Shown: in pieces, positions 13,858 through 60,794 of the stretch
Position numbering within the stretch: the first letter of the stretch is position 1
Layout: each line of letters starts with the position of its first letter
Assembly: GCA_029953675.1 (NCBI GenBank)
Contig: JAMWBK010000004.1
Coordinates: 2,418,001 to 2,482,000 of the forward strand
DNA length: 64,000 nt
Direction of reading: 5' to 3'
Origin: Rhodosorus marinus CCMP1338
Lineage: Eukaryota; Plantae; Rhodophyta
Position numbers and translations under genes: made by a program
Notes under the pieces: generated by a model
What the model was told of the DNA's origin: nothing
The model's input: the letters and a program-made list of their open reading frames with translations, nothing else
Databases searched by the model: none

Positions 13858-13876
13858 TGAAAGATCGTTATCTGTA

Positions 13877-22500: not shown

Positions 22501-25500
22501 GAGGAGGATGAACAGGAATCAATAATCGCTGCTGCCTGTGAAGTGGTTAAAAAGGCAGAGAAAGGCAATCTATCCGGAGAACCGGTCTCCGCGAGGTCAA
22601 CTAACGCCGCAATAAAGTTGCTGCGGATGGCTTGGGACGAGTATGGAGATCTGTGGCTGAAGTCCGTGTACAAGAAGTGCAAGGTGTGGGTGCTGCTGAG
22701 AGAGATGCTATCGAAGCCAGCTAGTCTCAAGAGTCTGACGATGCCAGGGCTGCTCTCGGTTGAGGAGGTCAAGGTTGCTGATTCCACTGGAACCAGCCAA
22801 GATAGTCTCGCGGAGACATCCGATGAGGTCGCTGAATGGCGGCTTGCACTGGCCAATGTCGTGTATACTCTCTCCAGCGAGGCTGTCACGAGTTCTGCGG
22901 GCGATAGGGAGACTCAGGGAACTTCTGATTCGGATCAGACCTCTACTGAAGACTCTAAGAACGCTGCGATGCTGCGCGAAATTTGCAACGAGGGCTGGAC
23001 AGACGTCATCTTCTCTGCCGAAGCACGTGAGGAACTGATGGTGAACTTGGAGGAGCTGTCGGAGTCGATTTCGGAGCTCTCAACCCAGCGTATCGGTTCA
23101 CCGCTAAGCTTTGCGCCCAGTGATGATGGTCAAATGCTGGGGAGAACATATCTCGTCGAGCTCGGGCCAGCGCTTCAAGCTAAGCACGATCAGCGAATTG
23201 ACTCGTCGAGCGTCGATGTCCTCGTTCAACAACTGTCGCACCTAAATCTACTTCTTTCTCGCTCGGAGGCATACTCACAGCTGCTAGGGGCTTTTGCCGC
23301 TGCAAACATTGCCCTGCACCAGATTGAGAACCGGAAGAGGGCTGGTGGAATACTGAGCTCAAACCCTCTGGCAACACCCAACGCAAAAATCTCGCCACGA
23401 TACTTGACAGAACTGTTCTGTCGAGGTTCGAGGATGTTGAAAGACCTTGGACGGAGGCAATCGACGTTAAGAGTGAGGGCAGAGATTGCACTGATGCTTG
23501 CAAGTCTGGCGCCGGTAACGGCAAGTGGCATCGTCCTTGACCGGGAAGTGATTGATGAAGAACACAAGCCAAACGAATTACTTCAGAACATCACTACATC
23601 TCTGAGAAGTTGGTATGCTTCGAGTCCAGCACCGAATGGATCCTTTAAGAAGTATCCACAGTCTCTGCTTTTGGCGGGTGCGAAACATGGTAAGCAGCGT
23701 CCCCCGGAGCGGACCTGTCGGAGTCTGATAGTTCATAAGCTTTATCTGAATCGTTTCTTTTCTTTTTGCTACTGTCCTATGATAGTGCCTTACTGCGGAG
23801 CTGAGGCCGCTGGAGACTTTGTATCTGCAGTGCTCGAAGGTTTTTACAACGATTTGGGTACTAGCGGCGAGTCACTACAGGCTGCGGTTGCTACGCTGAC
23901 GCTTGCTAAAACCTCGAACGAAAGCGGGAGGCTACAGGTGTTGCATCACAGGAAGACCTTATCGCATTTTGATTGAAGCGTATCTCGTTCGCTAACGATG
24001 ATGCGCACTCTACCTTCTCGGTGAATGGATGTGCTTGTTTTCTGCCAGGCAAGCTTGAGAGGGCTCTATCTATGCTCTAAGATGGATGGAATGAGCGCTG
24101 CGGAAACAGCTGACAGCATGCTCTTCCTCATGCTAAGGATGCTCTGCGATCCGTCCATCATGAGCGATCGATTCCATGACGAAGTGTTGCGGAGCTTTGT
24201 CGGAGCGCTGACGACATCGTCCCTGCTGAATGGAGCGGAGATCCCGGGATACGTGGATGAAAATCTTGAGCGGAACCCCCGCCACAAGCTTTATTGCACG
24301 CTCCTCAAGGTTTCCGCGGCGATGATATCGGGCCCGGAAGAAGGGGAGCCGGGGAGCTCGTCAATGGTGGAGCTGTTTTCTTTCCTTTCTCGTCACTTGG
24401 AGTCTCATTCTTTAGACCTTTCGGGTGATTGGCCTCCAAAGTCTCGCTCAACGGCTCAGCACCTTTCCCGACACATTTCTCTGGCAAGGCTATACGAGGC
24501 TGAGGCTGCCCTCGCCCTTTTGTGGGCTTTTTCCGGTTCGCCTTTTGCCACCACTCCTAGACGACGTGTCCCCCTTTCTTAGTCTCACGATTTGCTAAGA
24601 ACCGTGTTAACGTGGTTTTCTTCCTCGCTAGGGCATACCAGCACGTTGAGCACAGAGCTTCCGGCGGTCTTGGACTCGATCATGAAGAGCGCGAAGACCT
24701 TTTTCTATGAAGGCTACCGTTTGCTCCGTGCTGAGCCCATACAGCGCTGGGTAGTTCCGGTCTCAAGCACGGAGGTCAAGGAATCAGCCAGTCTCGGTCA
24801 GACAAGGACTGGCGAGGATACAACTCCTGTGAAGCTCAACGATTTTAGAGGGAGTCCTGCGACTGAATCAGCTAGAGAAGCGGTCGGGAGACGATATATA
24901 TCTGCTGCACCTCCCTCACCGATCATGCCACAAACACCGCTTACCGCGATGAACACTTACCAGACTCCTGACGGGCTCTCGGACCCAAGTCAATCCGAGG
25001 ACAACCTGAAATTCGGCGAGGAAGCTGTTCTGACGATACTCAGAGCTATGCGCAACGCGCTCGCGTGCATAAGGCGGTATAGCTCATACGTGGCGAAACC
25101 ATTGTTTGAACCGACTATGGTCTTATCCGCAGATAGGGCGAGCTTAGGCCTCCTCATTGCCGTACAACTCCATGCTACGCATGAGCTGCAACGTAAGCAC
25201 CAAGGAAATCACAAACAGTTTCTGTCTGGCCATTGTATCCCTTGAAGCTCACGAGAATCAATCCTCCGCATGTTGGGTTAGGTGGTCTTCGCGATGACAA
25301 CAGAGACATAATCCACTCCATTGCAGAAAACGCCTTGGTCATTACGATCAGGCACACGGTTGGGTTCATCAATGAGGTTGGTTTTGAGGCGAAAGTTTCC
25401 ACTTCTATGATTGACAAGTTCGTGTTCTCATCTAGATTTTGCTACTTCTTTTGCACTTGCTTGAACCTAACGTAGGGTACGCTCACCTCGGGAGTCCGGG

Positions 25501-26302: not shown

Positions 26303-27310
26303 TCAAAGTCCAAGTTCACGCTTCATTCTCTGCAGTTCGTCCTCCACATCCTTTTTAACTCTCTCTCTCTCCTCCTTGACAGTGTTCCGTGCGACTTCAG
26401 TTGCTGTTTTGACGTCCTCCCGAGCTTTGGCCTCGCCTTCCATTGTAGCAAGCTTGGCCTTGATTCGATCGATCGAGACTTTCTGCTTCTCCTTCATTGA
26501 CACAACTTGATTGAGCTTCTTTCTGTCCCTAGTTTGCTCCCGGCTGAAGGCTTCGGCTCTGTCCGCCGCTGCTTTCTTTGCATCGAAGTCGAGGCCTGCT
26601 CTCTGACTTCGTTCTCTCCACTGAATTTCCAATCGCTCCGCCGATTCCAGTTCCTGATGAAGTCTCTTCTCCCTCGCCTCTAGTTGCTCCAGGACGAAGA
26701 CATTATCACTCAACTCCGATTCCAGTTCCTCGATGGTTCCATTCTTCAGCATATCATCCAATCCATCTCCGTTGGAATTAATTCCAACTTGCTTCTCAAG
26801 AAACTCGACAAAATCGGAGGCGATGCCACCCGTACCAGTAGATCCGACGTCCGAAGCTGCCTTCGAGACCGTTGAGAAAAGGTCACTGAAAATGCTCCCA
26901 AAGGAGTCGTTCAGATCCTCGGGGAAAGGTCCATCCCTCTCCGACCACGGACTCTTAAACCCGTTCCCAGCGTTACTAGTTCCGTAGCTTTTAGAGCCCC
27001 CAAAACCGGCTCCAGTCCCCATTCTAATCTTCAGATCATAGGTAGACCTCAGTTTGGGATCAGAAAGCACCTTATACGCCTCCTGTACCTGCATGAATTT
27101 ATCCGAAGCACCAGGATCCTTCGATACATCGGGATGATTTCTCAACGCCTCCTTTCTGTACGCCTTCTTGATCGTCCTAACATCAGCACCCTGTTCAACA
27201 CCTAGGACTTCATAGTATGTCAAACACACCCAAACCCTTCTCGTCGCACATCTTGAAAGCTGACGACCTCTTTTAGGCCCAAAACATATTCCAGAATTCA
27301 CAAAACCCAT
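26303..27310 (-). CDS. Plastid-targeted J-domain (DnaJ) protein with a C-terminal coiled coil, intronless
   Basis: Transit peptide [12 protein letters not shown]-domain YYEVLGV...[16 protein letters not shown]...[15 protein letters not shown] with intact HPD. K/E-rich tail ending [10 protein letters not shown]. Confidence 0.88.
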
Positions 27311-28413
27311 CCCCAAAAACCAACCCCACCCCCACCCAAAAAAAATTTCTCACAAATCCTCCCCCCAAAATCCAAAAACTAGCCCTCCTTCTTATAATCC
27401 ACACAAATCATTTTCCACTCCAAACTCTGCAAAGCCCTCCCCATTTCTCCACCCCCTCCCCTTCCTCCTCCTCCCCCCGCCCCCAATCAAACCTTACCCA
27501 CATTAAATATAATTTGCAGTCTTCCCTCCCCACTGCCATCATCATCACCAAAAACAATCCCATTGCCATTCATTCATAATTCCCCTTTTTCGAATATACA
27601 CAGCAGCAATCCAAAAATCGAACTTTCCAAAGACCAAAATAAATAGACATATAAAAAAAACCCACCAAACTAGCCATGTTTTAAGCGTTTTGGTGGAGGC
27701 ATGGAGCATATGGCCCCCCCGGTCGTGGTTGAGCGTCTGCAGACGATAATAATAAAAATTAGATGTATCCCATGATGTTGGGGCACAGTTTGGGGGCATT
27801 ATTGCATTGAGGCATGTCCGTTGTTCAAATTTATTTTCCATATTCATGAAAAAGATGCCTCCAAGATATACTCATTAGTACAACCAAAATACTATATATC
27901 GAAACTCATTCGTATAATGAAGAAAAAAATAATATCCCCATGAAAATGAATTATTAAACTAAAATTCATTAGAGCCATAAATTTTTAGAACGTGGTCTTA
28001 GAAGATCAAAACGTCTTTCGCATTCACTTTTTCGACATATGCCGAGAAACCACCACTTTGAGAAGCTTGGGTTCACCTACCTGTATAAACGGTCAACAGA
28101 AGGATTTTGGGGTACACGGACGCGTGAGGGGAGGGGGGGGGCAGGCTTGTTGGATGCATCAGCAATCCACACGAATCAGTTGGAATCGTCGATATGGTAT
28201 GCTCCCTGGGCCGGGGTGGGGGAGCGGCATCAAAACCGTTGAAATCCGCTCCATTCTTTAGAAGGGACTAATAGGGGCATGCCCTCGCAATATGATTACA
28301 GTTAGACCCCGACTATTGCCTTCCCCCCCCCCTCCCCCCCACAACCTCCTCTCCGACTCATTTCTAATGCTTGCCTTCATCCCACTTTGCAGTTTTTTTT
28401 TTCCCTAAACCAG

Positions 28414-28490
28414 ATCAGTCAACTAAAAAAGATTGAATTAAACGTAACAGGCCTCATAGAGGTCAACTAGTCTTTCTTTAGTTGACTGAT
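28414..28490. repeat. Inverted repeat with a 14-bp perfect core and three copies of GTCAACTA
   Basis: ATCAGTCAACTAAA at 28414-28427 versus TTTAGTTGACTGAT at 28477-28490; an extra GTCAACTA at 28462-28469. Confidence 0.85.
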
Positions 28491-28949
28491 ATTTTTTTCC
28501 GAGTAAAAGGGGGGGGGGAGGAGGGGGGAGGGTTCCGTGGTGATCAAAACGGAAGACCATTGGTCGGTAAGGGGGGGGAGGGGGGCTGGATGTAATGTTT
28601 TCCGTAATACTTTTGGGGTTAGATTAAATTCAACGCATATTCTTATTTACGTTATATTGTTTTGTCTATATTTTTGGAAAGAGAATTTTTTTGCGTTTCA
28701 CTGGTGGGGTTTGGGAATGGTGGTGGTGCCACTAAAAGGTGATTGACATGGATACATCTGGAACATCGCTGGGAAGGGACTTTGGGTGGGGGATTGTCGG
28801 ATTATCTGTTGTCTTTGGCACATTGTCTGGAGACGGTGTCGTAGCCAATTTTTTCATCGGTGTTCATGATTTACATGTTTTAGTTAGATTGTCAATTTTA
28901 CAAGGATTTGTCCTATTTGGTTGTTAGAAAATATGTGGTTTTCACCACG

Positions 28950-31096
28950 TCACAGCTTGAGTTTTGAGGAGGACGCCTTCTCAGTCGAAATCGGCGCCGC
29001 AGCGTCGAGCGTGCCTTTGATGTGTTCCTGAGCAGATTGCTGTATCGCGGAGAAAAAGTTCTTGCTTTGGTTGAGTTCGCTTCTCTTGCTCTTGCCCTTT
29101 CTTCGGGCCTTTGCGGCAGCTGCGGCGGCAAGCTTCTCTTCCTTGCGAGCCTTTACAAGCGGGTCCGCAGCTTCAATAGCCTTAATCGCGGCTTCCTTCC
29201 GCTGCGTTTTTGTCTTAGCCCTCTGCTTTTTGGCCCTTCTTCGAGCTTTCCGCTCCTCCTTCGTCATTTCGGTTTCTGCTTTAGTAGGTTTTTTGACAGA
29301 ATATACTTCTCGAGGCGCGAGAACCATGGCGTCCGAAACGGCATCAGGTACCGCATCCTCCATGAGCAAAGCGGCCACATTCTGGGTCGGCTGTGGGGTT
29401 TCAGGCACTACCACCTTCGGTGTATAGTGTAGAGCTGTAAGAACGTCCAGTTTCCTACAAAGCTTGTTAAACAGTCGATCGATCTCAACGTGTTTAGGGT
29501 CCTTCGGCGGCCCCTCCGCTGGAACGTCGCCTTCCCTAGGTCGCCGATCTTGCTCTTTAGCAGCAGCGAGGAACTCCTTCTCGTACATCTCCGCAAGTCC
29601 TTCCTTCGGCTTCTCTTGCGAGAGGGCTTCTGAGGCAGCCTTCGTACGTTTTTCAACTGGTGCAGCCTTCCGGACAACATCATCGAAGAGCTCCTCCGCC
29701 ACTCGCTTTCTGATCACGGTCTCGAGCTCCTCAGTCGCTTCCTCTGTTGCAACTGGAATGGGCTTCGAGCCAGCGCTATAATCCAGTGTCGCATCGAGAA
29801 GGCTGTTCACAGGCCTAGAGTCCCCAGTTACCTTCGAAAGACCAAAACAAAACTCGTCGTCTTAATCCTCACAATCAATTTCAAAAAGCGGGTCCAAAGA
29901 CACCTCAGTATTACCTCTCCCTTCATGGCCCAGGACTTCTTCTCAAGCGCTTCCTCTTCGAGTTTAGTTATCTGTTTCCTCAACTTTTCCTGATTCCGCT
30001 TGTAAGAGGTTTGCTCTTCTGCTTCTACTTTATCGTCTTCTGCGTCGAGAAGCAGAGCTCTCTTGCGAACACTACACACAGGATTGAAAGGTCCTCAGCA
30101 ACTACGCAGCAGTAAACCAAGAGCGAAGGTCGCCTCGTCAAAGTGCTCACCTTTCGTGCTCTGCCGGAGATCCAAAGAAATCCGCATACTTCATCTCGGA
30201 GTCTGCCAACTTTGACACCCGCGTTTCGGTTCCAATGCTCGTTTCATCAGGCTGGTCAGCACTGCCTCCAATCTCAAATTCGTCTTCCTCCTCTTCATCT
30301 TCACCGTCCTCATCATCACCATCGGGAAATATCTTGCCTTCTTCATCAAGCTTTTCACTCATTTCCAAGAAGTCCTCCAACTCGTCAACCTTGAAAAATT
30401 CTTTGCCCGTCGAGAGAGCGAAAACAGGACCTCCCCGTAAGGAAGTTGAACAGCAAACCCTCTCGGGATATCCCTCAAAGAGGTACTTGACAATCATCTC
30501 TTACCATCATCAAGCGGCGTCTTCTGCTTTGGTTCGTCCTGCTCGTCATCTTTGACTTTTTCGTCTTCTTCAACTTCAAAGGATACGCTCTTTTTGGGGG
30601 CCTTTTCCTCGTCTGTTTTGGAGGGCAAGTCATCGTCCTGTCCTGGTTCGTCGTCGAAATCTTCTTCGTCGTCGTCTTCGTCCTTATCGTAACCCTCTTC
30701 CGCATTTAATTCCTCATACTCCTCATCAGAATCACCCTCTACCAGTTCTTCTCCGTTCCCATCATCAACTTCTTCAACCTCATCGGATGATTCAGCGCCG
30801 TCTCCTGAAACACATTTAACCAGTTTTTCAACTTCCTCGAGTCTGCAGTTTAAGAAGCTCGCTAAAGGCCGGTTCCTCAACTGAATCTCCTGCCAGACGT
30901 GCTCAGTCGCAAAGGACAGGTCAAGCTCCTCCACAGTCTTCGCCGCAACTGGAACGCCTTCCACTCGAGAATGCCCGTCGAACAAAGACTTAGCGATCGC
31001 CGCACAGGACAAAGACAAAGACTCATCCGGAGAAGCAAACTCCGCCGCTGATAAATCAGCAACTCCTAGAACTTTATCCAAAATCTTTCCGTCCAT
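28950..31096 (-). CDS. MPP10: U3 snoRNP protein MPP10, multi-exon
   Basis: EHVWQEIQLRN, a long acidic tract, EFFKVDELEDFL, KSWAMKGEV, RPVNSLLDATLDY, IRKRVAEELFDDVVRK, MEDAVP and LAPREVY motifs; K-rich end SSKLKL. Confidence 0.93.
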
Positions 31097-42480: not shown

Positions 42481-42958
42481 CCCCAGCTGAAAACAAGTTC
42501 AATCATTCCGCAAATAATGATTATGTTCAATCATTATTACTGGGTGGTAACTGAGGAATCAAAGATACTGCCGAGATGAGATTTGGCATATTTTATTGGT
42601 GAGAGGGTTTGGATATTAACGAATGATAATTCGTCAAACTGGAGCTATTTATGAATTACACTAATATTATTCGTACTACGTTTTTTCTTAGGTAAGTATT
42701 GATTCAGAGATCGAAATGGGCTCTTTAGGTTATTTGAAAAAAAGAAACAAATGTCCAGTGAATATCTGTAAGCAGATGGATTGATTTTTTTTTGTTCGGA
42801 GAGGTCATTGAAAGATTCGATGTATTGGCTGAGGATATGGCCTTTGTGGGTATATAGGGCTGATAGAGCAGTGCCTGTGGACTGAGAATTTGGAACTCAG
42901 AGGAGTGAGTTCTCTGGCCCTTTTTAAAGCGGGTGGTGCTGATAAGCAGGAAACAGAA

Positions 42959-44186
42959 ATGGGACCTGTTGCTTTTGTTGGTCTCGTGAGTTTGGCTGAG
43001 AGAACTGCCGGAAGGGGTCGGAGAAGATCCTGTCTGGTGCGAGCTGCGGATGAGGAATCGAAGTCCCGGGTGGGATACTCGCTTATACAGTTCTTGTTGG
43101 GCCTGCAGCTGGATAGTAGAGTAGGAACTGGCACAGAATGGTCCCCGGAACTCACGAAGCTTACATATTCGGTGTCGTTTGGATGCAAGCGAATTCATCG
43201 GCTTCTAGAAATGGCTGCGTTGCGAGATGAGCAGTTCGTCATGACCAGGGCGAATTCGATAATGAAGAGTTCGCTGTGGAGAAACAATAGGTTAGCAGTC
43301 ATCTCTTCACAGCAGGAATACAAGGCGCTTATGGTTGGCGAAAACTTTCTGGAAGAGTTTGTTTGCGTCTTTAATCCTTTGGATTGCTATGACGGAGTTA
43401 AAGCTGGAATACCCTCAGCGACTACTTTTGGGGTTTACCGCAGGAACCTGAGCTGTCTAGCATCCAACTTTCAGTCAAAAATTAACGAAGAGGAAATATC
43501 TTGTCTCCAGACGACCCTTCAGCCTGGATCTAGCCTACTGCTAGCTGGTTATTGCACATATTCTTCCGCCACCGTTCTTACCCTCTGTGTGGGCTCCAAA
43601 GTTCACATCTTCAGTCTTGACGATGAAATCGGAGAGTTTGTGCTCACAAGGGAAAACGTCCGAGTGCCTGATAAGGGATACACGTATACGTTCGAGGAGT
43701 CCTTAATGCCAACGTGGTCGGGCAACCTGCAGCAGCACATCCTTAACCTACGTGAGCAGGAAGGACCATTCGGCGAGAGCTACGAGAGCAGGTAACAAGC
43801 CAAGACGTAGCCCGACTAAAGATAGACAAGGTGAAGTGGAGGCTCTGCCGCCGGTATTTTATAGTGATCTAATACTTCCCTCACCATCCTCGCCTTCCGG
43901 CAATCTCAGGTTTATCGGATCGTTTGTTGCTGATGCACATCGAATTCTTCTCCATGGCGGTGTGCTTGGTGTTCCTGGTGACGTATTCGACAATCCAAAG
44001 GGCTTTAAACTTTTGGTTTACGAGTGCTCTCCTCTCGCCTATATTTTCAAATGTGCGGGAGGAGACAGTACTGACGGGCGAGGCTCTGTCCTTGATACGA
44101 TTCCGAGCACATTGAAGCAAGTGTCTCCGATATTCCTCGGATCCAAGCAGAACGTACGAGAACTGGTGGCAGCGCTGAAGAGCTAG
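42959..44186 (+). CDS. Plastid-targeted fructose-1,6-bisphosphatase (class I)-like protein, predicted catalytically inactive
   Basis: Transit peptide MGPVAFVG. Collinear FBPase motifs ELTKL, FNPLD, FGVY, LQPG..L.AGY..YSSATVL, FSLDDEIGEFVLT, RFIGSFVADAHRILLHGG, LVYECSPLAY, AGG and IFLGS. One intron at 43792-43909. Confidence 0.9.
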
Positions 44187-44475
44187 AAGTGCTCTAGCAA
44201 AGCTCGCTTCATCGACGAGAACGCCATACTGACTTTGTTCAATTTTATCCTCATCACCTAAAACTTTTAAGATCACGGCTCCAGGCCACAACTCGCTTAA
44301 AGCAAAAACTCGCTCAAAAAGAAAGCACCCCCTAAAAACGTTGGCATCTAAATAAGATCTGTTCAATTTCAACATCCCTCCTCCCCCCTTCCCCACTTTC
44401 TACCAGCCCATTCGGTAGCACAAAAAGTCTTGGCACTCCTTGGGCATCTAACATCTACGGTATGTTGCTGCTTCT

Positions 44476-46283
44476 TCACTTCGGTACGTATGGGAATTCT
44501 GCGTACGTTCGTGATTGCTCCTTGTCTTCGCCTTCAAACCCGAGAGCTCGGCCATAGTTCGTAACTTGACCCCCTTCCGCAACTTCAATGGTAATGTTCG
44601 ACTTGGAGCCAAACTGTATTGCATCAACTGCGAGTTTGGCTATGTCATCTCTGGGCACCTAATTGGGGCCACAATGAACAAGCACGTGAGACTTCAATCT
44701 CTACCGAGCCGCGAAAGGTCTGCGTGACTCGTACTAGCGGACATACCTTTCCTTTCAATGTGTCCCCCTGAGAGTACTGCAGCCTACCAGATGGATTTTC
44801 TTCCGTAAGTGCACATGGTCGAACTATGAGATACGGAACCCCCGCTTGGCGAATACAGTCTTCACCAGCAAGTTTCCAGTCTAAGATCCGTCCGAGCATC
44901 TCGTTCATTCGAACAGCCGGGGGTTCCTTCTCAAGGTCAGGGAATTCGTCCTATGGATAGAGGCGTCACGACTGAGCAGAGCGACAAAAGCGAATTCCGT
45001 CGAGATGTGAAGACGGAAGCAGTGATAAGTACCTTTCGATGTACTCTGGTCACACCAGCAGTTGAGATGTGAACCACCTTCGGAGCGTTCGAGTACGTGG
45101 ATATGCTTTCTACCTCTAGCACGAAACGGCCCGCTGTAAAGTTCGGGTTTAGCTTTCCGTCGTACTCAAACTTGGAAAGCATTAGCTGAAAAGATCGAAC
45201 TTGTCGCGGATCAAATTTGGCGTCAACAGTTTTGGCACGAAACACTGGTGTGAGCTCGTCAAAGGGAACTTGCACGTCTATCCATTGGTCCTGCATTGTA
45301 GGCAGCGAGAGCGTTAGCCAAAGCAGAGGAAAGGAACCTATTTCTTGAAAGGGCGGTGGCCGACTCAAACTTCGTACTTCAACGGTGTCGAACGAGTAGG
45401 AGAAGCCCACTCCATCCCATTTTTCCTCCGTCCTGACGATGAACTTGAACCGATTCCCGTCTCCTTTCACCCTCAAAGAAAACCCGAGCGCGGAAGGGCT
45501 CAGTTGCAGTGGTTTATCGGATGTACGACTTCGGACAGATGCAAAACCTCCATTGTTTGCTGTGGAAACGAATCCATCAAAGACCCCGTTGCCGTCCACG
45601 ATTCGAATATTGCTCTCGCTGACTCCGCCCATTACTATATCGTCAATAATCCCCCACATTTTCTTGGCGTCCTCGACGTTTTCGAAGCTTAGAATCTTGG
45701 TCGTATTCCCTCCCAACAGTTTGGTCTTTTCAGCCAACTCCTTGATGCCTCTGTATTCAACATTCTCTGGAGTATCTTGCAAAATCACTGGCGGGTAGAA
45801 CACGACGCCTTGATAATACTTTTCTCTATCTGGAGTATCATCTGTGGGTCCCACCATAGTTCCCGTACACGAGACAACCGCAGTCGCACCCTTGAAAAAG
45901 TCTTCATGGAGATTGTAAAGGTCTGATACTAGCAGATCAACATTGTCAGCGTCCGCCCCAAGGATCTTTCTCGCCCTCTCCTCTGACCTAACGAGCGCCC
46001 TCACTTTGTATCCCCGTTTCAAAAACTCTCTCACAACCCGCTTACCAACACCACCGGTCGCCCCAGTCACTATAACCGTTCCCTTCTCCCCGGGAGACTG
46101 GAAAGACTTTGGCGGCGGATTCATCATCTCACCGATCGGAGTGAAGAACACAAAATCCTTCAGGAACCTCGCAACCGGCCAAGGTTTCCTCCCCTCCGCT
46201 GCCAGTCTAACACATTTCCCAGCACTTCCACTCCTCACCCCACGATAGATCCCTGTCCCATTCACAAACCCCGCTTCAGCCAT
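44476..46283 (-). CDS. Plastid-targeted NAD(P)-binding Rossmann protein with an inserted CIA30 domain, multi-exon
   Basis: Transit peptide MAEAGFVNG. VIVTGATGGVGKRVV (Rossmann), WGIIDDIVMGGVSES and GFVSTANNGGFASVR (CIA30), then KLAGEDCIRQAGVPYLIVRPCALTE and GDTLKG...RDDIA (Rossmann C-half). Confidence 0.88.
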
Positions 46284-47871
46284 ATCAAACCCCACCAAAC
46301 CACCTTCCCCGCACCCCGACAAAAGGAAACTCTTTCACCGAACCGATCTAACAAAACAACAGTAAATCCATCCAATTCTCCTCTCCGACGCTCTCTCTCT
46401 CTCATCGATCCTCCCCCATTCCAAACTTTCTGCTCCTACCAAAAGCAGTCTTCCCTTCCCACCTCACCCCCACACACAAGTAGTCTCCCTCCTCCCCAAA
46501 TACCCAAAATCCAAATACATTGATTTTTCCATCCAAAACAAATCCCAATCACCAAAATGAAAGATTCATGAGAAGCTCTACAAAAACAAACTCTATATGA
46601 AAATAGTTCAACCAATTCATTAACAGCAAATATTAATTTTCCGCTATCCATTGGATGTAATAATATAAATAAAAGAATAAAATAGAACTCTATTAATTAT
46701 TTAGTACTAAACGTATTCATGTATATTATATTTATGATGTAATTTTAAAATCATGCTGTATAAGATAAGAAAATTTAGATAATCAGTGGAGGACGGTCTC
46801 TTTTGGATTAGCAGTCTGGGAAGCTTTTTTCCATAGAAAGTATATTTTGTAAAACTGAAATACATTTATAGGTTTTTTGTTGTTCGTGGGATAGATAAAA
46901 GGGGGGTTGGGATGAATTGAAGTTTTTTGTCATTGAATTGTAAGTGGAAAACGATTTGTGTCCACATAATCTGATTCGAGGTTGGTTTAACGGAATTTTT
47001 TCATGTCCATCAGGTTGTTTGGCAATGGATATGAGCGGATGGGGATTCTCTTATGTTTTCTTGCGATCGGAAGGCTGGAGTCCAGAGTGAAATCGTCGCG
47101 AAGGGGGTGGAAAGGACGATTAAGGTAGTAGGAGCTGATATAGAGTTACTAGACTGTGCACCAGCAACTTTCCATCCTAACGCAACTTCGTATCTACCAG
47201 CACTACGTTCTTTCCCTTGGGCGAAGGTCTGCCATGAAAACGGGAGCCTTTCGCTTTGAAGGCTTCCGATTAGTAACTAAATCTGGCTTGGAGTGCCTTT
47301 GCAATTGTTTTACTGACTGTCTGGAATATCTGATGCCTTGAGTTGGAGCGCAACGGTAGTACTTCGCTTATAGAGGGTGGCATACCTTTGAATAGTAGCT
47401 CCGTGGTTGCACTTTGCGCTCGAGCCGGCAGCACGTTGGGCCATCATACCGGGCTTTTTTGGGGTTGCGGTTTCCGGGTACTCTAGCGGAGCTGTGACCC
47501 CGGCGGGATAAACAGGAACGAAAGACGCGCCCACGCACAATCCAATCGCACGGCAGGGTTTTCAATTGAATTCGATTGAATAGAGAGTTCCCTCCCTGTG
47601 GACCACATACCGCTCCGCTAAGGTACCCGGCAACCGCGACTCTCCCCTAAAGACCACGCTACTCCGCAAAAGATTCTGAATGGCTAGACACAAGATCGGC
47701 GAATGTTTACATCCCCTGTTTGAGATCCTGCTCTTTTGTCAGGAATCTCCTGGGCAAATCAACGCCGCTTACGGTCTTGAAGCCGTTGTCAAGACTTAGT
47801 TAATGCTATACGGCAGATTCAGCTTTTGAGTAGCGTCGATTCGAAGTATCATATAAGGCTGGTTTGTCAGT

Positions 47872-48617: not shown

Positions 48618-49151
48618 TTACTCGGTCTCCTCCACGCGGACTCTGGCCTTGGAGTTAGTGACCTTCACATCAAGCTCCGCAGCGCGGGAGATGATTTCCT
48701 TTCGCTTCTTCGAGGATACGTTATGGGCGATCTCAGCAGCGTATGTTCGGTTATGCATCAACAGAAGGTCGAGCTCCTTGACATTATTGACGACAAACTT
48801 ATAGAATCCGTTGGGCATCAAGTGTCGCGTTTTCTTGTTCGAGCCATAACCAATATTAGGCATAAGCACCTTTCCACGGAACTTTCTTCGGACCTATGTA
48901 AACCAAATCAACCGAAAAGAACAGAGAACGCATTAGATCATTTCGACAATTTCAAAGCTCGAACTTTGTAATTATGACAATGCCATGCAACAAATTCCAA
49001 AACAGACGAACGACTCTCAACTTACACATGAGTCAATACCCTTCGGTCTCCTCCAGCTCTCCTTTACCCTCAAGTACCTATCAGTATGATGCCTCTTGAA
49101 CTTCTTCGTCCTCTTCTTGACAACCTTCGGTTTCTCCAACGGAACCGCCAT
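48618..49151 (-). CDS. RPL32: 60S ribosomal protein L32 (eL32), 2 exons
   Basis: [48 protein letters not shown] and [18 protein letters not shown]. Intron 48894-49025. Confidence 0.98.
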
Positions 49152-50930
49152 TCTAATACAAACCACAAGGAGTTACCAAACAAAACTTCAGCCATCCAAA
49201 AACAAACAAAAACCCCAAGCCAAAACAACTCTAGCAGAAGATCTGCAGCAACACTCACCTTCCTAATCCTTCAAAGTCACTCCCCTAAACACTCCAATAT
49301 GCCCTTCCCAAAGGAGCCAATCCTTCCCACATCTTCACCCTCTCCCTCCGACTAAATGCCCCGTTCACTAACCGAAACCAAATACCTTTCTTGCTCGTCG
49401 CGGTCACAAAAGTTAGTCAACTTCTCCATCGCGACGTCCGTCGCCGTCGATAATAACCTACCCCTGGCCAAAGAACTCCGCCAACTTCTCCCCCCAAAAA
49501 GGAGATCGGGCAATACAAATCGACGAATAACCCGGGGTAAATAAACTCATAATACTATAAATAAAACATACTTTCATATTACTACTCCTTCTATTGGGAG
49601 GGGTTCATGACATCCTCAAAGAAGTGCCCTGAAACATCTAAACCCCCCTGCAGGGTTCGGTGAGTAAGACCAAGCGGATGATACAAAAGGGGGGGTACGA
49701 CAGTCTAATTGTGAACTAAAATCGATGAAACTTTTAGAGTTAAATAGACATTGGAGAAGGTTTTTCGTTGGCACAATGCACGGCCCTTTTTTTGCTGAAA
49801 AAGGATCTTCTTGAGCGTCCTTTTGGACAGGCTGTCGAATAGATAAGATGTGTTTTTGCAATGGGGAATGGGGGGATTGATATCGGGGTAGTCGGGCCGA
49901 TGATAGGGTTGATGCATGCGAAGCGTTGAAAGTTAGTAGCAAGTCCCTGGCATATGCTTGGTCGGACTTTTGCAACTAAGAAATCGTGATCATCGGAGTG
50001 CTGCATTTGTGGGAGGTGCTTTCCGCGACACCTTTTTGAGACGTTTATACTGCGCTAAATAGCTTGTCAAAGGCCTGACAACGTGAACGGCAGCATTGGG
50101 CAGTGCTTTCTTCAATGTCTTTCCGTTCGCTCCAGCTTTTTCGTGTGTCCCTGCCGTGTAACCCTCGACCCGCTCGAGGCTTGCATCCCCGATAGGCAGC
50201 CCGCCTAGAGCTCCGAAGGTTCTCGGCCGGTTTTGTCTCTCCTCCCCATTACACTGGTGAATAGTTGACAACCCGTACCGCTGTCTCCAGTGCTGACACT
50301 CATTGTAAAAAATACGAGCTTATAGAAACCTACAGAAGAAGCTCGGGGTCACACATTCGGGTGCCCTCCGTCTGGAATAAAGCCGACGAAATTTCCAGGT
50401 CTTGATTCTCCTGGAACCACTGGAACCACAGAAACCACCATTTCCATGCCGGTCGCGACATCGACGATCCAGCAAGCTCGCGTTCTACCTGATGCTCACC
50501 ACGCACTTCTTTCCCATTCTTGTAGGAGGAACTCCGCCAGGAAGTACTTGCTAAATGAAATAATGATTGAAATCACTCTTTACAACGATATGATTGGATA
50601 TATCCGCAGTTAATAACCAATCACAGATTATATTTTCCAACTGATTTTTAACTTGATTGATTCTCGTCATGGCCGGTGCGCAACCCACACGGGCAAAATG
50701 ACTTAAGTCGACCGAGAGAAAGCTGCAATTCCCTGGAGCTTGAGAAAGAGTGCGGAGTAACGGAGTGAATTTGTTTTGGTTCATTTTAAGGTGTTTTGAA
50801 GAGCTGTGAGTATGCTCAGCGTTTGAGCTTTGACCCACCGTTTTCCGAGAATGTCCGTCGAGGCTTGAGTTGGTGAACGGCAAGGACAGGGTCAGGTTGG
50901 TTTTTTTTTTGTTTGGTAGACTTGGAGGGT

Positions 50931-53798
50931 ATGTCACGGTTGATTGTTAAGGGCTTACCCAAGCACCTAACTGAGGAGAGACTGAAAAATCACTTCTCAA
51001 GTGCTGGAGAGGTCACTGATGCGCGAATACGAAGAACCAAGGATGGTAGGAGCAGACAGTTCGGGTTTGTCGGCTTCAGAAGTTCTGACGAGGCGAAGGA
51101 CGCCAAAAGAATGTTCAACAACTCGTTCTTAGATACGAATAAGGTATCTTTTGTGTCGTATATCCACGTAGTAGTTTCTTATTCAGCCAGGAAGACGTCT
51201 AAGTCTGTTTCTTCTGTATCTCTTCCAGCTAAATATTGAGATAGCACATCCTTACGGAGATAATAGAATTCCTAGAGGTTGGAGCAAGTACACAAAAGGC
51301 ACTTCAGGTTATAGTAAGCTTCATCCCCAGGATGAAGTAGACGGCCAAGAGAAAACGGCCAATGAACCAGGAGATGAGAATGAAAACCGTAAGAAAACCA
51401 CTTCGGACAGGAAAAAGTCAGACAATTTGGAAGAGTTCATCGCCGCTGCGCAGCCGAGGTCGAGGAAATACGTCTGGTCAAACGACGATTCGACGAATTT
51501 CGTCGCGTCTGAAGTAAAAAAAACAGTCAAATCGAAGAAGCGAGGTGGAGAAGGTAGGAAGACCACCAGACAATGAGAAGTTCCCAGCAGTTCACAATAG
51601 GCCTATCCAGACTGTCGCTACTTGAAAGGGTCTAAAAGCCAATTCAGTGCAAAGCAGTCTATTGACTAAGCTCTTCCTCTGGTTTTTTGTCGGGGCAGGA
51701 GTCGCTCTGGAGAGGACTCACGTTACATTCGATGAAGATGAATCCGAAAACGACGAAGTTAACCACAGCGAAGAGAGCGGTGCAGAGGAGAAGCGCAAGG
51801 CCAGTAATGCAGACGCCGATTCATCCCAAGAAGAAAATGTCGCGAGAGATAAAGGTCTTACTGATCTTCAGTACTTCAAATTGAAAAGTGGTACGATTGA
51901 GGATTCTGACGAAGAGACTGATGGATCTCGTCCCTCCAGCGACGACGGAGACGACAACGAGGAGGACGATGCTGGTAGCAAGGATGCTCACGAGAATGCC
52001 CTTGATGATCAGCCTAAAACAGAAGAGATCCCGACCTCGGCGAATCCAGAACGTGCAAGTGCCGAGTCAGATGATGTGGAGCCTCTTTCGGAGAGCGGGA
52101 GGCTCTTTGTCAGGAATCTACCTTACGCAGCAACTGAAGAGGAACTTGAGGAACTCTTTCAGAAATTTGGAGCATTGGCAGAGGTTCATCTCTGTGTGGA
52201 CGCGACCACAAAGGTGTCCAAGGGTATGGCGTTTGTCATGTATGTTATCCCAGAAGATGCCGTGAGGGCTGTGTCGGAACTGGACGGAAGCGTATTTATG
52301 GGTCGACTTCTCCACATTCTCCCAGCGCGGCCTAAGGAGAAGAAAGAAGAGGCTGCTGGCCATGCTGCTGGTGATGAAGAAGGCCAGGGATCCTCATTCA
52401 AAAGAGACAAGCTGAAGAAACTCAAAGAAGCAGCTCGAACGAGATCTGATGTCGTAGCTTACAATCCACTCTTTATGAGCGGAGACGCTGTAGCAGGAGC
52501 CCTGGCGGAACGATACATGGTCGACAAGGCAGAGATTCTCGATGACGAAAACGCCGCGGTCCGCTTGGCATCCGGCGAAGCACAGCTGCAGGAAGAAGTA
52601 CGGGAAGTTTTGGTAAAAGAAGGTGTAAACGTAGAGGCCTTTTCAATGATGGAGAAGACATCGATGAAGACGAAGAGATCTAAAAGCGTTATTCTCGTTA
52701 AGAACCTGCCAGCGGCAACAACCGCAGACCAGATTCGGGACAAGTAAGTACCAAAAGCATGTTCTAGCTGCCGAACGTGAAGTAATGAGACTGACTGGTT
52801 TCTGCAACCCTAGGTTTCTGAAGTTCGGATCACTTGGACGGGTGGTCGTGGTGCCATCCGGTCTGATTGCTCTTGTTGAGTATCTCGAAGCATCTGATGC
52901 GAAGAGGGGCTACAGCACACTTGCTTATTCTAGATTTCGTGAGAAACCGCTCTATCTTGAATGGGCGCCGCTTAACGCATTCAAAACAGAATTGTCTAGT
53001 CCAGCTACCGCCGGTACTGAGCAGCGGGAAGGCCGGCAGCAGGCGTCCAGGAACGTTGAGAACGAGGACCGCGCTCCCGATGAATCGACGAAAACAATTT
53101 TCGTGAAGAACTTGAACTTTTCTACCACCGACGAGGGCCTCCACAGGCTTTTCTCGAAGAAGAACAAGATCAAGAGCGCGAAGATTGCAAAGCGAAAGAC
53201 TGATTCCAAATCCATGGGATATGGATTCGTGGAGTTCGAGGATGGTTCTGAAGCTATGATAGCATTGAAGAAGATGCAAGGTGCTGCCCTAGATGGCCAC
53301 TTGCTGGAGCTTAAATTATCCAGGACGGGACAGAGGGAGACGGGCCTTGCAGGGACAGGATCAACGAGAAATATACGGACGTCAGCGGAGTCAGCGAAAA
53401 GCTCTAAGCTCTTGGTGAAGAACCTGGCCTTTGAAGCGTCGCGAAAGGAGGTCCGACAATTGTTCAGCTCTTATGGTGAGCTGAAGTCGGTTAACCTCCC
53501 CCAAAAGTTCGACGGTACTTCACGAGGATTCGCGTTCGTAGAGTTCAAGTCCAAATCTGAGGCGGCTGCTGCGATGTCTGCGTTGAGGGCCACGCATTTC
53601 TATGCGAGAAGACTGGTCATTGAATATGCTGAGGAAGAAGCAGACGTGTCGACAGAGAATGAAGCTGCCATGGCGCAGAGAATGAACAAAGAACAGCTGA
53701 AGTCAAGGCCAACCAAGCGCCGGAGGACGAACACAACTGCTGAAGACGGGGGGACTATGGATGGAGGCGATGAGGCTGACTACGAGATGTATAGATAA
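50931..53798 (+). CDS. RBM19: Multi-RRM 40S biogenesis factor RBM19/Mrd1, multi-exon
   Basis: MSRLIVKGLP...SRQFGFVGF, ESGRLFVRNLPY, SKGMAFV, FMGRLLHILPA, AVRLASGEAQ, VILVKNLP, KPLYLEWAP, TIFVKNLNFST and SKLLVKNLAFEA...RGFAFVEF RRM signatures. Confidence 0.95.
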
Positions 53799-58849: not shown

Positions 58850-60794
58850 ATGGGAGATCTTAGTAAATCTAAGACGGCGTACGGTCATGGCTATGGAAAT
58901 GCTCAACATCAGCCGTGGGATGAGCGGACTGGTCTACTGCAGCGATCACGATCTGTTGCTGTAACGAGTAAGGAGCGATGCGACGCACAAAGGTTCGAAG
59001 ATGTGGACTTGCTGTGTCCCAAGAGCATGGCCGTGGCCAATACGATCAATGGTGGAGGGATGATCGGTATGACTCCGAATGTCATGCCTCTGGTAACAAC
59101 ACTCCGGCAGAGAATCGATCGGCGGATAGCACAGTGGCAGAAGAAACCGGAAGCTGAGCAAGAGATTCCTACAGGACCGGAAGATGAAGTACCAGGAGTA
59201 GTGTGGGCTGTGTACGCTCTCGCGTTCTTCGTTATGATGACAATGACCACGATCTCACCAATTTTGCTGCTGTACACGAACTATCGAGGTTGGACAACAG
59301 AGACCAATCTGACGTTCTTTGCTTCTTTGTCACTAGCGAATGTTGTGGTACCAGTGATTGGAAACATAGCCGTCGGAAACTGGCTTGCCGCTAGTTCGGT
59401 GAGAACTGCGATGATGGGAATGCTTGCGATCACCGCCCTCGGACTGCTCCTGATGATCACCGCAGAAAGTAGTCATGTATTTTTGGCTGGTTACACTCTC
59501 CTATCTTTAAACACATCCAACAGAATTGTCCGGCTGACGTTCCTCAGTGAAATCGTCCCGGCAAAGCAGAAGACTTTCGTGATGGCGAATCACGCTCTAG
59601 CTACTCCACTTGGGGCTATGCTTGGTCCCATATCCTGGCTCGCCCTCGTCAAGTATCAAGCAGAAGCTGGCCCGTGGACGTTCATTCCAGGCTTCATGGG
59701 CTTCAGACTGAATCGGTTCACTCTAGCATTCTCGTGGACAGTGCTGGTTACTTTGGTATGTTGCGAATTCTCCAAATCACACCAGAACGTCGTAGTAAGA
59801 GCTAACACGAAGATTCATGCATGCCAGGGGATGATGGTCCTGGTTTGGATCTACTTCCCTGGGGCGAATTCACAGGACAGAGAAAAGAGCGGAGGGGCTA
59901 GAGCGGCGCCAATCGTTGGTCCAGTTCACCTCTCCCACAACGACACAGAGGAAACTGTCGACTCCGGGCAATTCCGCTACAGGGTGTTCAGATATTTTTG
60001 CGTGGTCATGTTCCTCATCAACTTCTCCGCGGGCTTCTTCCAGGTCGCATTTCAGCCCATTCTAGTGGACTACTTCAAGGTGACCGAGAGCTCCGTCGGA
60101 CTGATTTTTGAGGTAAGGAGTACTAGCAATGCCTGAAAAATATCTGATTGGTGGCTACCGCTGGTGTACAAGGTCCTACTTTCACTCACCACGTTTAATG
60201 GCGAAAAATTGGGGTGTATGCAGACAATAAGCATATTCGCCATTATACCCCCTTTACTCGTTGCTCTTCTCTCAAGATTCTTGGAAGATCGCCAACTGAT
60301 GCTCGTTGGTATTTGCGCGAAGATGCTCGGCATGTTTCTGTACTGCTTCCCCTTTGGGAAGATGCACATCTGGCAACCCGTCGTTGGCAATATCTTGATT
60401 ATCAAGGTGCGACCGTCGCAGTTTGGATAGACTATCGTGTCCCTCTCCTAATCAGCTCATTGAGCCGTGTGATTCCAATATGACTTTCTGTTCTGACTAG
60501 GCCTCGATCTTCTTCTTCACGAGCGCCATGTCGCTGTTCACCAAAATCCTTGGACCCCTGAGCGGGGGGCCTATGATTGGAATTCTATCTTCGGTTGCAG
60601 CAGTTGGACCCGCAATTGCGCAGTTGCTTGCGCTGAGACTTGTCCTCACGATCTACGGCACCTACTGGTATTTGCTTTTCTCCGTTCCGGCAGTTCTCGG
60701 TTTCTTCCTAGTCGCCCACCCGTGGTTTTACGCCACTCTTGACCCCGATCGAGAGTTCATCAAGCAATTGCATACCGCCGTGGCACAGCCATGA
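58850..60794 (+). CDS. Major facilitator superfamily transporter (MFSD8/CLN7-like), multi-exon
   Basis: About 12 hydrophobic segments. Motifs RLTFLSEIV...MANHALATPLGAMLGP, LSRFLEDRQL and SLFTKILGP...MIGILSSV...GP. GT-AG introns near 59758, 60112 and 60407. Confidence 0.75.

What the first reader, a model, noticed from the sequence alone, without database searches (positions are those of the whole stretch)
42959..44186. Plastid FBPase pseudoenzyme: metal-binding and substrate-binding residues are lost
Seen, against the canonical class I FBPase motifs: VSEED becomes SSQQE (E97/E98 to Q, 43310-43315), FDPLDGSSN becomes FNPLDCYDG (D118 to N at 43373-43375; G122, S123 and N125 changed), the mobile catalytic loop (NVTGDQVKKLD) is essentially deleted, SLNEG becomes TFEES (N212 lost), RYVGS becomes RFIGS, and GKLRLLYE becomes GFKLLVYE (K274 and R276 lost). 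Established: these residues bind Mg2+ and fructose-1,6-bisphosphate. The ORF, intron and transit peptide are intact and the fold motifs are preserved, which points to selection for a non-catalytic role. I know of no described inactive FBPase-fold regulator in algal plastids, but I could not search the literature.
Basis: partly seen in the sequence, partly recalled or inferred. Interest (0 to 1): 0.72.

Follow-up and report, generated by a model that had tools for sequence, protein, structure and literature searches.

The report
Catalytically dead plastid-type FBPase paralogue
The red alga Rhodosorus marinus keeps, under strong purifying selection, a copy of the Calvin-cycle enzyme fructose-1,6-bisphosphatase that has lost nearly all of its catalytic and substrate-binding residues, so it almost certainly does something other than catalysis.

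Summary
The gene (42959-43791 + 43910-44186, one GT-AG intron) encodes a 369-aa protein identical to the unnamed Rhodosorus marinus protein KAJ8906032.1. It has a confident FBPase fold and resembles pea chloroplast FBPase most closely. It lacks the catalytic loop and carries E97Q, E98Q, D118N, GSSN->CYDG, N212E, Y244F, Y264V, K274F and R276L.

It is not a decaying pseudogene. A spliced mRNA exists in a second Rhodosorus strain. dN/dS among three strains is 0.06-0.14, about 0.09 for the mature part, and the intron diverges much faster than the exons.

A syntenic orthologue has the same intron position, the same loop deletion and a different set of active-site losses. It lies in an unidentified relative and is 46% identical. 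Only L120 and R243 of 18 conserved active-site positions survive in both orthologues, against 47 of 77 other conserved positions.

Rhodosorus also has a fully canonical plastid FBPase.

Best reading: a pseudoenzyme, probably plastid-targeted, derived from the redox-regulated plastid FBPase. It possibly acts as a partner subunit of the active enzyme, but this is inferred, not shown. No such protein is described in the searchable literature. Similar dead FBPase homologues appear in brown algae and Cyanidioschyzon.

The parts
42894..42958 (+). 5' UTR (minimum extent)
   Evidence: The spliced transcript contig L001 from a second Rhodosorus strain aligns from window 42894.
42959..43791 (+). Exon 1 of the CDS (aa 1-277 plus two bases of codon 278)
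   Evidence: Gene model. The product is identical to KAJ8906032.1.
42959..43063 (+). Presumed plastid transit peptide (aa 1 to about 35, MGPVAFVG...)
   Evidence: pLDDT is below 50 for residues 1-33. dN/dS is 0.85 here against 0.09 in the mature part. The N-terminal x-F-V-G/S motif is shared with the orthologue and with canonical Rhodosorus and Purpureofilum plastid FBPases. The assignment is inferred; no targeting predictor was available.
43214..43234 (+). Site of the deleted catalytic (dynamic) loop, aa 86-92 AALRDEQ joining helix 2 to helix 3
   Evidence: The alignments show that 14-17 residues corresponding to pig 52-72 are missing. The AF2 model shows helices 63-88 and 91-107 joined directly. 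The same deletion is present in orthologue L002.
43304..43318 (+). SSQQE: E97Q and E98Q (metal ligand and catalytic-water residues lost)
43370..43396 (+). FNPLDCYDG: D118N, G122C, S123Y, S124D, N125G (metal and 1-phosphate site); D121 kept
43445..43528 (+). 'Loop 170' insertion typical of redox-regulated plastid FBPase, with C166 (43454-43456) and C182 (43502-43504)
   Evidence: The two Cys align with pea C153 and C173. The C153S mutant 1DBZ differs from 1D9Q at exactly that column. Both are kept in all three Rhodosorus strains. The second Cys is Ser in the L002 orthologue.
43691..43708 (+). FEESLM: N212E and Y215L (6-phosphate and sugar site lost)
43792..43909 (+). Intron (118 nt, GT-AG, phase 2, inside the codon of R278 = pig R243)
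   Evidence: It is removed in transcript L001. The orthologue L002 has an intron at the same position and phase (131 nt). It is 77% identical between strains, against 91-94% for the exons.
43910..44186 (+). Exon 2 of the CDS including the stop. Contains RFIGS (R243 kept, Y244F), GVLGVP (Y264V) and GFKLLVYE (K274F, R276L, E280 kept; 44001-44024)
44187..44369 (+). 3' UTR (minimum extent)
   Evidence: L001 aligns to 44369. The region is 82% identical between strains.

Best explanation
This is a real, expressed nuclear gene of Rhodosorus marinus. It encodes a pseudoenzyme that arose by duplication of the redox-regulated plastid-type class I FBPase.

Shown:
- The protein keeps the two-domain FBPase fold.
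- The mobile catalytic loop is deleted.
- Most metal ligands and nearly all fructose-1,6-bisphosphate contacts are replaced.
- The two orthologues have lost different subsets of these residues, so the old active-site pocket is not under constraint.
- The rest of the protein is under strong purifying selection.

Inferred:
- It cannot hydrolyse FBP or SBP and works non-catalytically.
- It is imported into the plastid, because it has a red-algal type presequence with an N-terminal Phe motif like that of the canonical paralogue.

Most likely mechanism (inferred, about 0.35 on its own). It assembles through the conserved FBPase dimer/tetramer surfaces, either with itself or, more interestingly, with the canonical plastid FBPase. 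In that case it would be a non-catalytic partner subunit that modulates activity or regulation. In FBPases R243 reaches into the neighbouring subunit's active site. It is one of only two conserved active-site positions kept in both orthologues, alongside L120, which contributes only a backbone carbonyl. It is also retained in nearly all other degenerate FBPase homologues seen here. In Rhodosorus the thioredoxin-target Cys pair of loop 170 is also retained, so the protein may still respond to light and redox state.
For: - Fold: Pfam FBPase and FBPase_C; best PDB match is pea chloroplast FBPase, E 7e-62; AF2 pLDDT 84, pTM 0.83; Foldseek TM about 0.9 to FBPases.
- Active-site loss. It is selective: 2 of 18 against 47 of 77 conserved columns kept, p = 1.4e-4. 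WIN and L002 differ at almost every lost position.
- Selection: dN/dS 0.136 for the full length, 0.092 for the mature part, and 0.10 and 0.064 for the other strain pairs. 70 of 99 differences fall at third codon positions. The intron is 77% identical against 91-94% for the exons.
- Expression and splicing: spliced transcript L001.
- Orthologue: it has the same intron phase and loop deletion. It sits in collinear synteny with the CIA30/NAD-binding, RPL32e and RRM genes.
- Canonical paralogue in the same species: P0339 has all motifs intact and is 37% identical.
- Origin: the pseudo clade is monophyletic (100%) and lies inside the plastid-type FBPases (100%). The loop-170 Cys residues are in register with pea C153 and C173.
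- R243 is kept in nearly all degenerate homologues. The segment pig 241-260 is among the best conserved.
Against: - No biochemical assay, localisation or interaction data exist.
- D121, E280 and R243 remain in Rhodosorus, so some residual or altered chemistry cannot be formally excluded for that species.
- R243 and the 241-260 segment may be conserved for folding reasons alone.
- The Cys pair is not conserved in the L002 orthologue.
- The N-terminal (AMP-domain) helices, which also form tetramer contacts in canonical FBPases, are the most diverged part.
- No orthologue was detected in other red-algal classes, so the function may be lineage-specific and minor.
- Part of the transcript evidence (L004, L005) is probably antisense read-through from the neighbouring gene.
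Confidence: 0.6

Rival explanations
1. The gene is a recently inactivated FBPase copy that is decaying neutrally and merely still has an open frame.
For: Many catalytic residues are lost at once and the loop is deleted. The protein evolves faster than its neighbours: 46% aa identity to the L002 orthologue, against 60-79% for the flanking genes.
Against: dN/dS is 0.06-0.14 in three strain pairs with dS of 0.26-0.52. The ORF, the intron position and phase and the synteny are all retained in a relative whose protein is only 46% identical. The intron and UTR diverge faster than the exons. A spliced mRNA is present. The fold is predicted with high confidence.
Confidence: 0.03
2. It is a neofunctionalised enzyme. 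It still catalyses a reaction on a different substrate or with a different metal geometry, using the remaining D121, E280 and R243 or a newly formed site.
For: D121, E280 and R243 persist in Rhodosorus. The protein is under strong constraint. The FBPase/IMPase superfamily is catalytically versatile (general knowledge).
Against: In the L002 orthologue D121 is N and E280 is Q, while E98 and D118 are present. No acidic metal-binding set is therefore common to both. The catalytic loop carrying D68 and D74 is deleted in both. Pocket residues differ at 16 of 18 positions between or within the orthologues.
Confidence: 0.1
3. It is a non-catalytic ligand sensor. It still binds FBP, F6P or another sugar phosphate in the old pocket without turnover and signals metabolite status. 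Catalysis-independent signalling by Arabidopsis cyFBPase/FINS1 is the analogy.
For: There is a precedent for catalysis-independent signalling by an FBPase (PMC8787203). The fold and pocket architecture are retained.
Against: All 6-phosphate contacts (N212, Y215, Y244, Y264, K274) and the 1-phosphate contacts (G122-N125, R276) are replaced in Rhodosorus. They are replaced differently in the orthologue. A conserved ligand site in the old pocket is therefore unlikely.
Confidence: 0.07
4. It is a non-catalytic protein whose function is unrelated to FBPase. The stable fold would have been recruited as a scaffold or binding module for another plastid or cytosolic process, without association with the active FBPase.
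For: Clade-specific conserved motifs are absent from canonical FBPases: RANSxxKSSLW, KALMV, PGDxFDxP, TDG and H311K. The N-terminal domain is strongly remodelled.
Against: There is no positive evidence for any particular partner. Retention of R243 and of the 241-260 segment fits oligomerisation of the FBPase type at least as well.
Confidence: 0.2

Closest known systems
Redox-regulated chloroplast FBPase (cpFBPase1), e.g. pea 1D9Q/1DCU; Rhodosorus marinus A0A7S3A1T8 (P0339)
   Same: It is the best sequence match (E 7e-62). It shares the two-domain fold and the loop-170 insertion, with two Cys in register with pea C153 and C173. It has an N-terminal presequence with an F-V-G/S motif. It nests inside the plastid-type clade.
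   Different: The catalytic loop 52-72 is deleted. It carries E97Q, E98Q, D118N, GSSN->CYDG, N212E, Y215L, Y244F, Y264V, K274F and R276L. It is only 37% identical to its own canonical paralogue, while canonical enzymes of two stylonematophytes are 89% identical.
cpFBPase2 / cpFBPaseII, the redox-insensitive plastid FBPase (Serrato et al. 2009; Li et al. 2020, PMC7195585)
   Same: It is a second plastid-predicted FBPase paralogue coexisting with cpFBPase1. It is reported in one red alga (Porphyridium) and in Ectocarpus.
   Different: cpFBPase2 is described as an active enzyme that lacks the conserved loop-170 cysteines. The Rhodosorus protein has those cysteines but lacks the catalytic residues. 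Clade membership could not be tested because no labelled cpFBPase2 sequence was retrievable.
Arabidopsis cytosolic FBPase FINS1 (fructose signalling independent of catalysis)
   Same: It is a precedent that an FBPase-fold protein can act non-catalytically (PMC8787203).
   Different: FINS1 is a fully active cytosolic enzyme that moonlights. The protein studied here has lost the catalytic machinery and appears plastid-targeted.
Toxoplasma gondii TgFBP1 (paralogue with minimal in vivo FBPase activity next to the essential TgFBP2)
   Same: It is a paralogue pair in which one copy contributes little or no FBPase activity and cannot replace the active one (PMC7729029).
   Different: TgFBP1 is cytosolic and is reported as an isoenzyme with measurable kinetics. 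No loss of catalytic residues is described in the text read.
Other degenerate FBPase homologues found here: Ectocarpus CBN77737.1, Discosporangium CAM9795000.1, Cyanidioschyzon merolae XP_005535415.1
   Same: They are FBPase-fold proteins of red-lineage algae in which several metal and substrate residues are replaced while R243 is kept. Databases annotate them simply as 'fructose-1,6-bisphosphatase'.
   Different: They keep a catalytic-loop-length segment or a differently shortened one, and they have different substitutions. There is no supported phylogenetic link to the Rhodosorus clade (NJ support 2-12%). The C. merolae protein has neither a presequence nor a loop-170 insertion.

Membership tests
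Class I fructose-1,6-bisphosphatase (EC 3.1.3.11; Pfam PF00316 + PF18913) | Two-domain FBPase fold and sequence homology | tested here: met
   FBPase_C scores 99.7 bits and FBPase N 65.1 bits, both above their cut-offs. Forty-one PDB FBPase/SBPase sequences match. AF2 gives pLDDT 84. Foldseek TM is about 0.9.
Class I fructose-1,6-bisphosphatase (EC 3.1.3.11; Pfam PF00316 + PF18913) | Acidic metal ligands and catalytic residues (pig D68, D74, E97, E98, D118, D121, E280) | tested here: not met
   E97Q, E98Q, D118N and D74M; only D121 and E280 are kept. In orthologue L002: E97G, D121N, E280Q.
Class I fructose-1,6-bisphosphatase (EC 3.1.3.11; Pfam PF00316 + PF18913) | Mobile catalytic loop (pig 52-72) | tested here: not met
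   It is deleted in both orthologues. The Pfam N-domain match starts only at profile position 68.
Class I fructose-1,6-bisphosphatase (EC 3.1.3.11; Pfam PF00316 + PF18913) | Substrate phosphate and sugar contacts (G122-N125, N212, Y215, Y244, M248, Y264, K274, R276; R243 from the neighbouring subunit) | tested here: not met
   All are replaced except R243.
Class I fructose-1,6-bisphosphatase (EC 3.1.3.11; Pfam PF00316 + PF18913) | Mg2+-dependent hydrolysis of fructose-1,6-bisphosphate | not testable with these tools
   This needs a recombinant enzyme assay.
cpFBPase1 (thioredoxin-regulated plastid FBPase) | Loop-170 insertion with the regulatory Cys pair (pea C153, C173) | tested here: met
   C166 and C182 align with pea C153 and C173. 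Both are conserved in three Rhodosorus strains. This is not met in orthologue L002, where the second Cys is Ser.
cpFBPase1 (thioredoxin-regulated plastid FBPase) | Plastid transit peptide and stromal location | tested here: inconclusive
   There is a disordered, fast-evolving N-terminal extension of about 25-35 aa, with the F-V-G motif shared with canonical red-algal plastid FBPases. No predictor or experiment was available.
cpFBPase1 (thioredoxin-regulated plastid FBPase) | Phylogenetic placement within the plastid FBPase clade | tested here: inconclusive
   It lies inside the plastid-type group (100% NJ bootstrap). Its position relative to red and stramenopile cpFBPase1 has only 55-65% support, and the branch is long.
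cpFBPase2 (Li et al. 2020, PMC7195585) | Plastid-predicted, loop 170 without the conserved Cys, and monophyly with Arabidopsis/Fragaria cpFBPaseII | not tested
   No labelled cpFBPase2 sequence could be fetched. The presence of the Cys pair argues against membership.
Pseudoenzyme (catalytically dead homologue maintained by selection) | Loss of residues essential for catalysis | tested here: met
Pseudoenzyme (catalytically dead homologue maintained by selection) | Evolutionary maintenance (purifying selection, orthologues, expression) | tested here: met
   dN/dS is 0.06-0.14. A syntenic orthologue exists. A spliced mRNA exists.
Pseudoenzyme (catalytically dead homologue maintained by selection) | Demonstrated absence of catalytic activity | not testable with these tools
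   This needs an assay.

The most novel reading that the evidence does not exclude
The protein is a light- and redox-responsive dead subunit. It would co-assemble with the active plastid FBPase into hetero-oligomers, donate R243 to the partner's active site and tune Calvin-cycle flux. It would also be one example of an overlooked, recurrently evolved class of dead FBPase regulators in red-lineage algae. Independent cases would be those in brown algae (Ectocarpus CBN77737, Discosporangium) and Cyanidioschyzon (XP_005535415). The natural tandem fusion of a degenerate domain and a canonical domain (P0096 family) would be a further example.
Probability: 0.2. Interest if true: 0.75.

Novelty: new variant of a known kind. 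Interest (0 to 1): 0.52.

Why it matters
Plastid FBPase is one of the main flux-control and redox-regulated steps of the Calvin-Benson cycle. No non-catalytic FBPase-fold partner has been described for it in the searchable literature. A conserved dead paralogue would add a new kind of regulator to carbon fixation in red algae.

It also bears on annotation. This protein, and similar degenerate homologues in brown algae and Cyanidioschyzon, are labelled 'fructose-bisphosphatase' in databases or counted as isoenzymes in comparative studies such as PMC7195585. This can mislead metabolic reconstructions.

The limit on its importance is the narrow distribution found so far: Rhodosorus plus one relative.

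Tried and rejected
- **Searches for more orthologues.** I ran a word-indexed search with the single protein and with a three-sequence profile. I also ran a full HMMER scan of 1.84 billion representatives. Beyond Rhodosorus strains and P0097/L002, only canonical or independently degenerate FBPases appeared.
- **Link to Cyanidioschyzon merolae XP_005535415.** It shares an N-terminal SLIQ[FY]L motif found in no other of about 420 sequences. I rejected the motif as evidence of orthology. NJ support is 12% and prone to long-branch attraction. The C. merolae protein also lacks the loop-170 insertion and a presequence, and its loop shortening differs.
- **Link to the N-domain of the tandem P0096 family.** It is unsupported (2-4% bootstrap).
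- **Placement relative to cpFBPase2.** It could not be tested (no labelled sequences).
- **Interface-conservation analysis on the AF2 model.** It was not possible because coordinates are not exposed. Only a sequence-window conservation profile could be made.
- **Identity of the organism behind SRR22824290/SRR22824282.** It was not resolved. It is not mentioned in the Rhodosorus genome paper.
- **L004/L005 as independent evidence of sense expression.** I rejected this. They are spliced for the minus-strand neighbour's introns and retain the FBPase-like intron.
- **Literature searches.** Searches for FBPase pseudoenzymes or inactive plastid paralogues returned nothing relevant.
- **tRNA scan of the window.** It found no tRNA genes.

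Full report
**Observation**

The region contains a two-exon gene on the + strand. The CDS is 42959-43791 plus 43910-44186, with a 118-nt GT-AG intron, and encodes 369 aa. The translation is identical to GenBank KAJ8906032.1, 'hypothetical protein NDN08_002532 [Rhodosorus marinus]'. The window is therefore nuclear DNA of this unicellular stylonematophycean red alga. The genome is that of strain CCMP1338 (PMC10250338).

Pfam finds both FBPase domains, but the N-domain match begins only at profile column 68. The best solved relative is pea chloroplast FBPase 1D9Q (E 7e-62).

I mapped the alignment onto pig-kidney numbering. The recalled reference sequence was validated because all landmark residues fall at their literature numbers. 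The mobile catalytic loop 52-72 is deleted. D121, R243 and E280 remain.

**It is not a decaying pseudogene**

Evidence from other Rhodosorus strains:
- A 1367-nt transcript contig from a second strain (JGI 3300017118, L001) carries the same 369-codon ORF with the intron precisely removed.
- A third strain (JGI 3300016967, L004/L005, linked to MMETSP by P0099) supplies a further allele.
- Nei-Gojobori dN/dS is 0.136 for the full length. It is 0.092 for the mature part and 0.85 for the first 36 codons. The other two strain pairs give 0.10 and 0.064, with dS of 0.26-0.52.
- 70 of 99 differences lie at third codon positions.
- Exons are 91-94% identical, the intron 77% and the 3' UTR 82%.
- The degenerate motifs themselves are conserved among the three strains.

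**A deep orthologue exists**

A full HMMER scan of 1.84 billion representative proteins returned one further orthologue-like hit, P0097. It comes from Logan assemblies of SRR22824290 and SRR22824282.

Its 7.6-kb contig (L002) shows the following:
- It has an intron at the same codon and phase (131 nt).
- After splicing it gives a 367-aa protein that is 46% identical to the Rhodosorus protein.
- It is collinear with window 43.2-51.4 kb. The shared genes are the convergent NAD-binding/CIA30 gene, RPL32e and an RRM gene, at 60-79% aa identity.
- It shares the loop deletion but has lost a different subset of residues. E98, D118, Y244 and K274 are present. D121 is N, E280 is Q, R276 is N, Y264 is S and E97 is G.

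Among 95 columns that are near-invariant in 21 canonical FBPases, both orthologues keep 2 of 18 active-site columns (L120 and R243). They keep 47 of 77 other columns (Fisher p = 1.4e-4). The old active site is therefore released from constraint while the scaffold is not.

No orthologue was detected in other red-algal classes.

**Structure and origin**

AlphaFold2 with a 41-sequence alignment gives pLDDT 84 and pTM 0.83. Only residues 1-33 are disordered, and helices 63-88 and 91-107 are joined directly where the loop should be. Foldseek matches pig and human FBPases with target-normalised TM of about 0.9.

Rhodosorus marinus also has a canonical plastid-type FBPase (UniRef A0A7S3A1T8, P0339) with every motif intact. 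It is 37% identical to the dead copy. It is 89% identical to the enzyme of another stylonematophyte, Purpureofilum.

In an NJ tree the three dead sequences form a 100% clade on a long branch. This clade lies inside the plastid-type FBPases (100%). Its position next to the red-algal and stramenopile plastid enzymes is only weakly supported (55-65%).

The protein carries the 'loop 170' insertion, with two cysteines in register with pea C153 and C173, the thioredoxin-regulated pair. The C153S mutant structure 1DBZ identifies the column. Together with the tree, this points to origin from the redox-regulated plastid isoform.

The N-terminus (MGPVAFVG...) resembles those of the orthologue and of canonical red-algal plastid FBPases (x-F-V-G/S), and it evolves nearly neutrally. 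This is consistent with a transit peptide, but that assignment is an inference.

**Mechanism**

It is shown that the protein lacks the loop and most ligands needed for the established three-metal FBPase mechanism, and that it lacks the FBP contacts. It follows from established enzymology of class I FBPases that it is catalytically dead.

What it does instead is inferred. The pocket residues differ between the orthologues, so a conserved ligand site in the old pocket is unlikely. The same argument makes a new catalytic activity there unlikely.

Three observations bear on the alternative:
- The best conserved segments are pig 151-170 and pig 241-260. The latter includes R243.
- In canonical FBPases R243 inserts into the adjacent subunit's active site (established knowledge; Giroux, Williams and Kantrowitz 1994, recalled from memory).
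- R243 is also retained in nearly all other degenerate FBPase homologues seen here.

I therefore favour a non-catalytic subunit that oligomerises through FBPase-type interfaces, possibly with the active plastid enzyme. In Rhodosorus it may still be redox-responsive. I put about 0.35 on hetero-assembly specifically. I put about 0.8 on 'non-catalytic function maintained by selection'.

**Comparison with what is known**

- A study of FBPase isoforms in photosynthetic eukaryotes recognises cyFBPase, cpFBPase1 and an active, Cys-less cpFBPase2. It does not consider catalytic-site loss (PMC7195585).
- Catalysis-independent signalling by the active Arabidopsis cyFBPase FINS1 is a functional precedent (PMC8787203).
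- The low-activity Toxoplasma paralogue TgFBP1 is a second precedent (PMC7729029).
- Searches for an FBPase pseudoenzyme or an inactive plastid paralogue found nothing.

The protein fails the defining catalytic features of an FBPase while being an unambiguous homologue. It is best filed as a new, non-catalytic variant of the plastid FBPase family.

**Wider pattern and caveats**

The representative search also surfaced other degenerate homologues:
- In brown algae: Ectocarpus CBN77737.1 and Discosporangium CAM9795000.1, whose degenerate motifs are conserved between the two.
- In Cyanidioschyzon merolae: XP_005535415.1.
- In insects.
- A metagenomic tandem protein with one degenerate and one canonical domain.

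None is demonstrably orthologous to the Rhodosorus clade. Together they suggest that dead FBPases arise recurrently.

Caveats:
- There are no experimental data.
- The known distribution is narrow.
- The NJ phylogeny is limited by the long branch.
- The relation to cpFBPase2 is untested.
- The species of the L002 orthologue is unidentified.
- Part of the transcript evidence (L004/L005) is probably antisense read-through from the downstream gene.

Noticed in passing
P0396 (= XP_005535415.1 / BAM79129.1, Cyanidioschyzon merolae); not in the window: The protein annotated 'fructose-1,6-bisphosphatase' in C. merolae has no presequence and would count as its cytosolic isoform. It is itself degenerate: D121T, S123R, S124A, N125Q, N212D, Y244R, K274H and a shortened catalytic loop. 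It shares an N-terminal SLIQYL motif with the Rhodosorus clade. The sequence is at least 90% conserved across 25 cluster members from hot-spring metagenomes.
   Followed up: partly
P0406 (Ectocarpus siliculosus CBN77737.1), P0118, P0119 (Discosporangium CAM9795000.1); not in the window: Brown algae carry a plastid-type FBPase homologue with D118N/A, D121V, GSSN->GAGG/GASG, N212D, K274G and R276T. These degenerate motifs are conserved between two deeply diverged brown algae. This looks like an independent dead FBPase.
   Followed up: partly
P0096 cluster (91 members, metagenomic contigs up to 960 kb); not in the window: This is a natural tandem FBPase of about 730-766 aa. The N-terminal domain has a loop shortened by about 10 residues plus D74N, E97D, S123V, S124T and Y264Q. 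The C-terminal domain is canonical. The organism is unknown.
   Followed up: partly
window 43313-45064 (both strands); loci L004, L005: Transcript contigs from a third Rhodosorus strain are spliced for two minus-strand introns of the downstream gene (window about 44659-44746 and about 44959-45031; CT..AC on the + strand). They retain the FBPase-like intron. The convergent neighbour's transcript therefore seems to run antisense through the FBPase-like gene, unless the assembler merged overlapping convergent transcripts. The 44659-44746 intron is retained in L004 and spliced in L005.
   Followed up: partly
window 44470-46322 (-): The convergent downstream gene encodes an NAD(P)-binding (NmrA/NAD_binding_10) plus CIA30 domain protein. 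Its adjacency to the FBPase-like gene is conserved in the L002 relative, together with RPL32e (about 48618-49127, -) and an RRM gene (about 50918-51387).
   Followed up: partly
window 19579-23976 (+): An uninterrupted 1465-aa ORF has no Pfam match at E <= 1e-4.
   Followed up: no
window 13775-18044 (+), 26303-29810 (-), 51647-53798 (+), 58850-60136 (+): These are ordinary housekeeping genes: a MIF4G protein and UPF2, a DnaJ protein, Mpp10, two RRM proteins and an MFS transporter. There are no tRNA genes in the window.
   Followed up: no
L001, L004 versus the window (whole gene): The three 'Rhodosorus marinus' strains differ by dS 0.26-0.52 at this locus. The name probably covers several cryptic species.
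   Followed up: no
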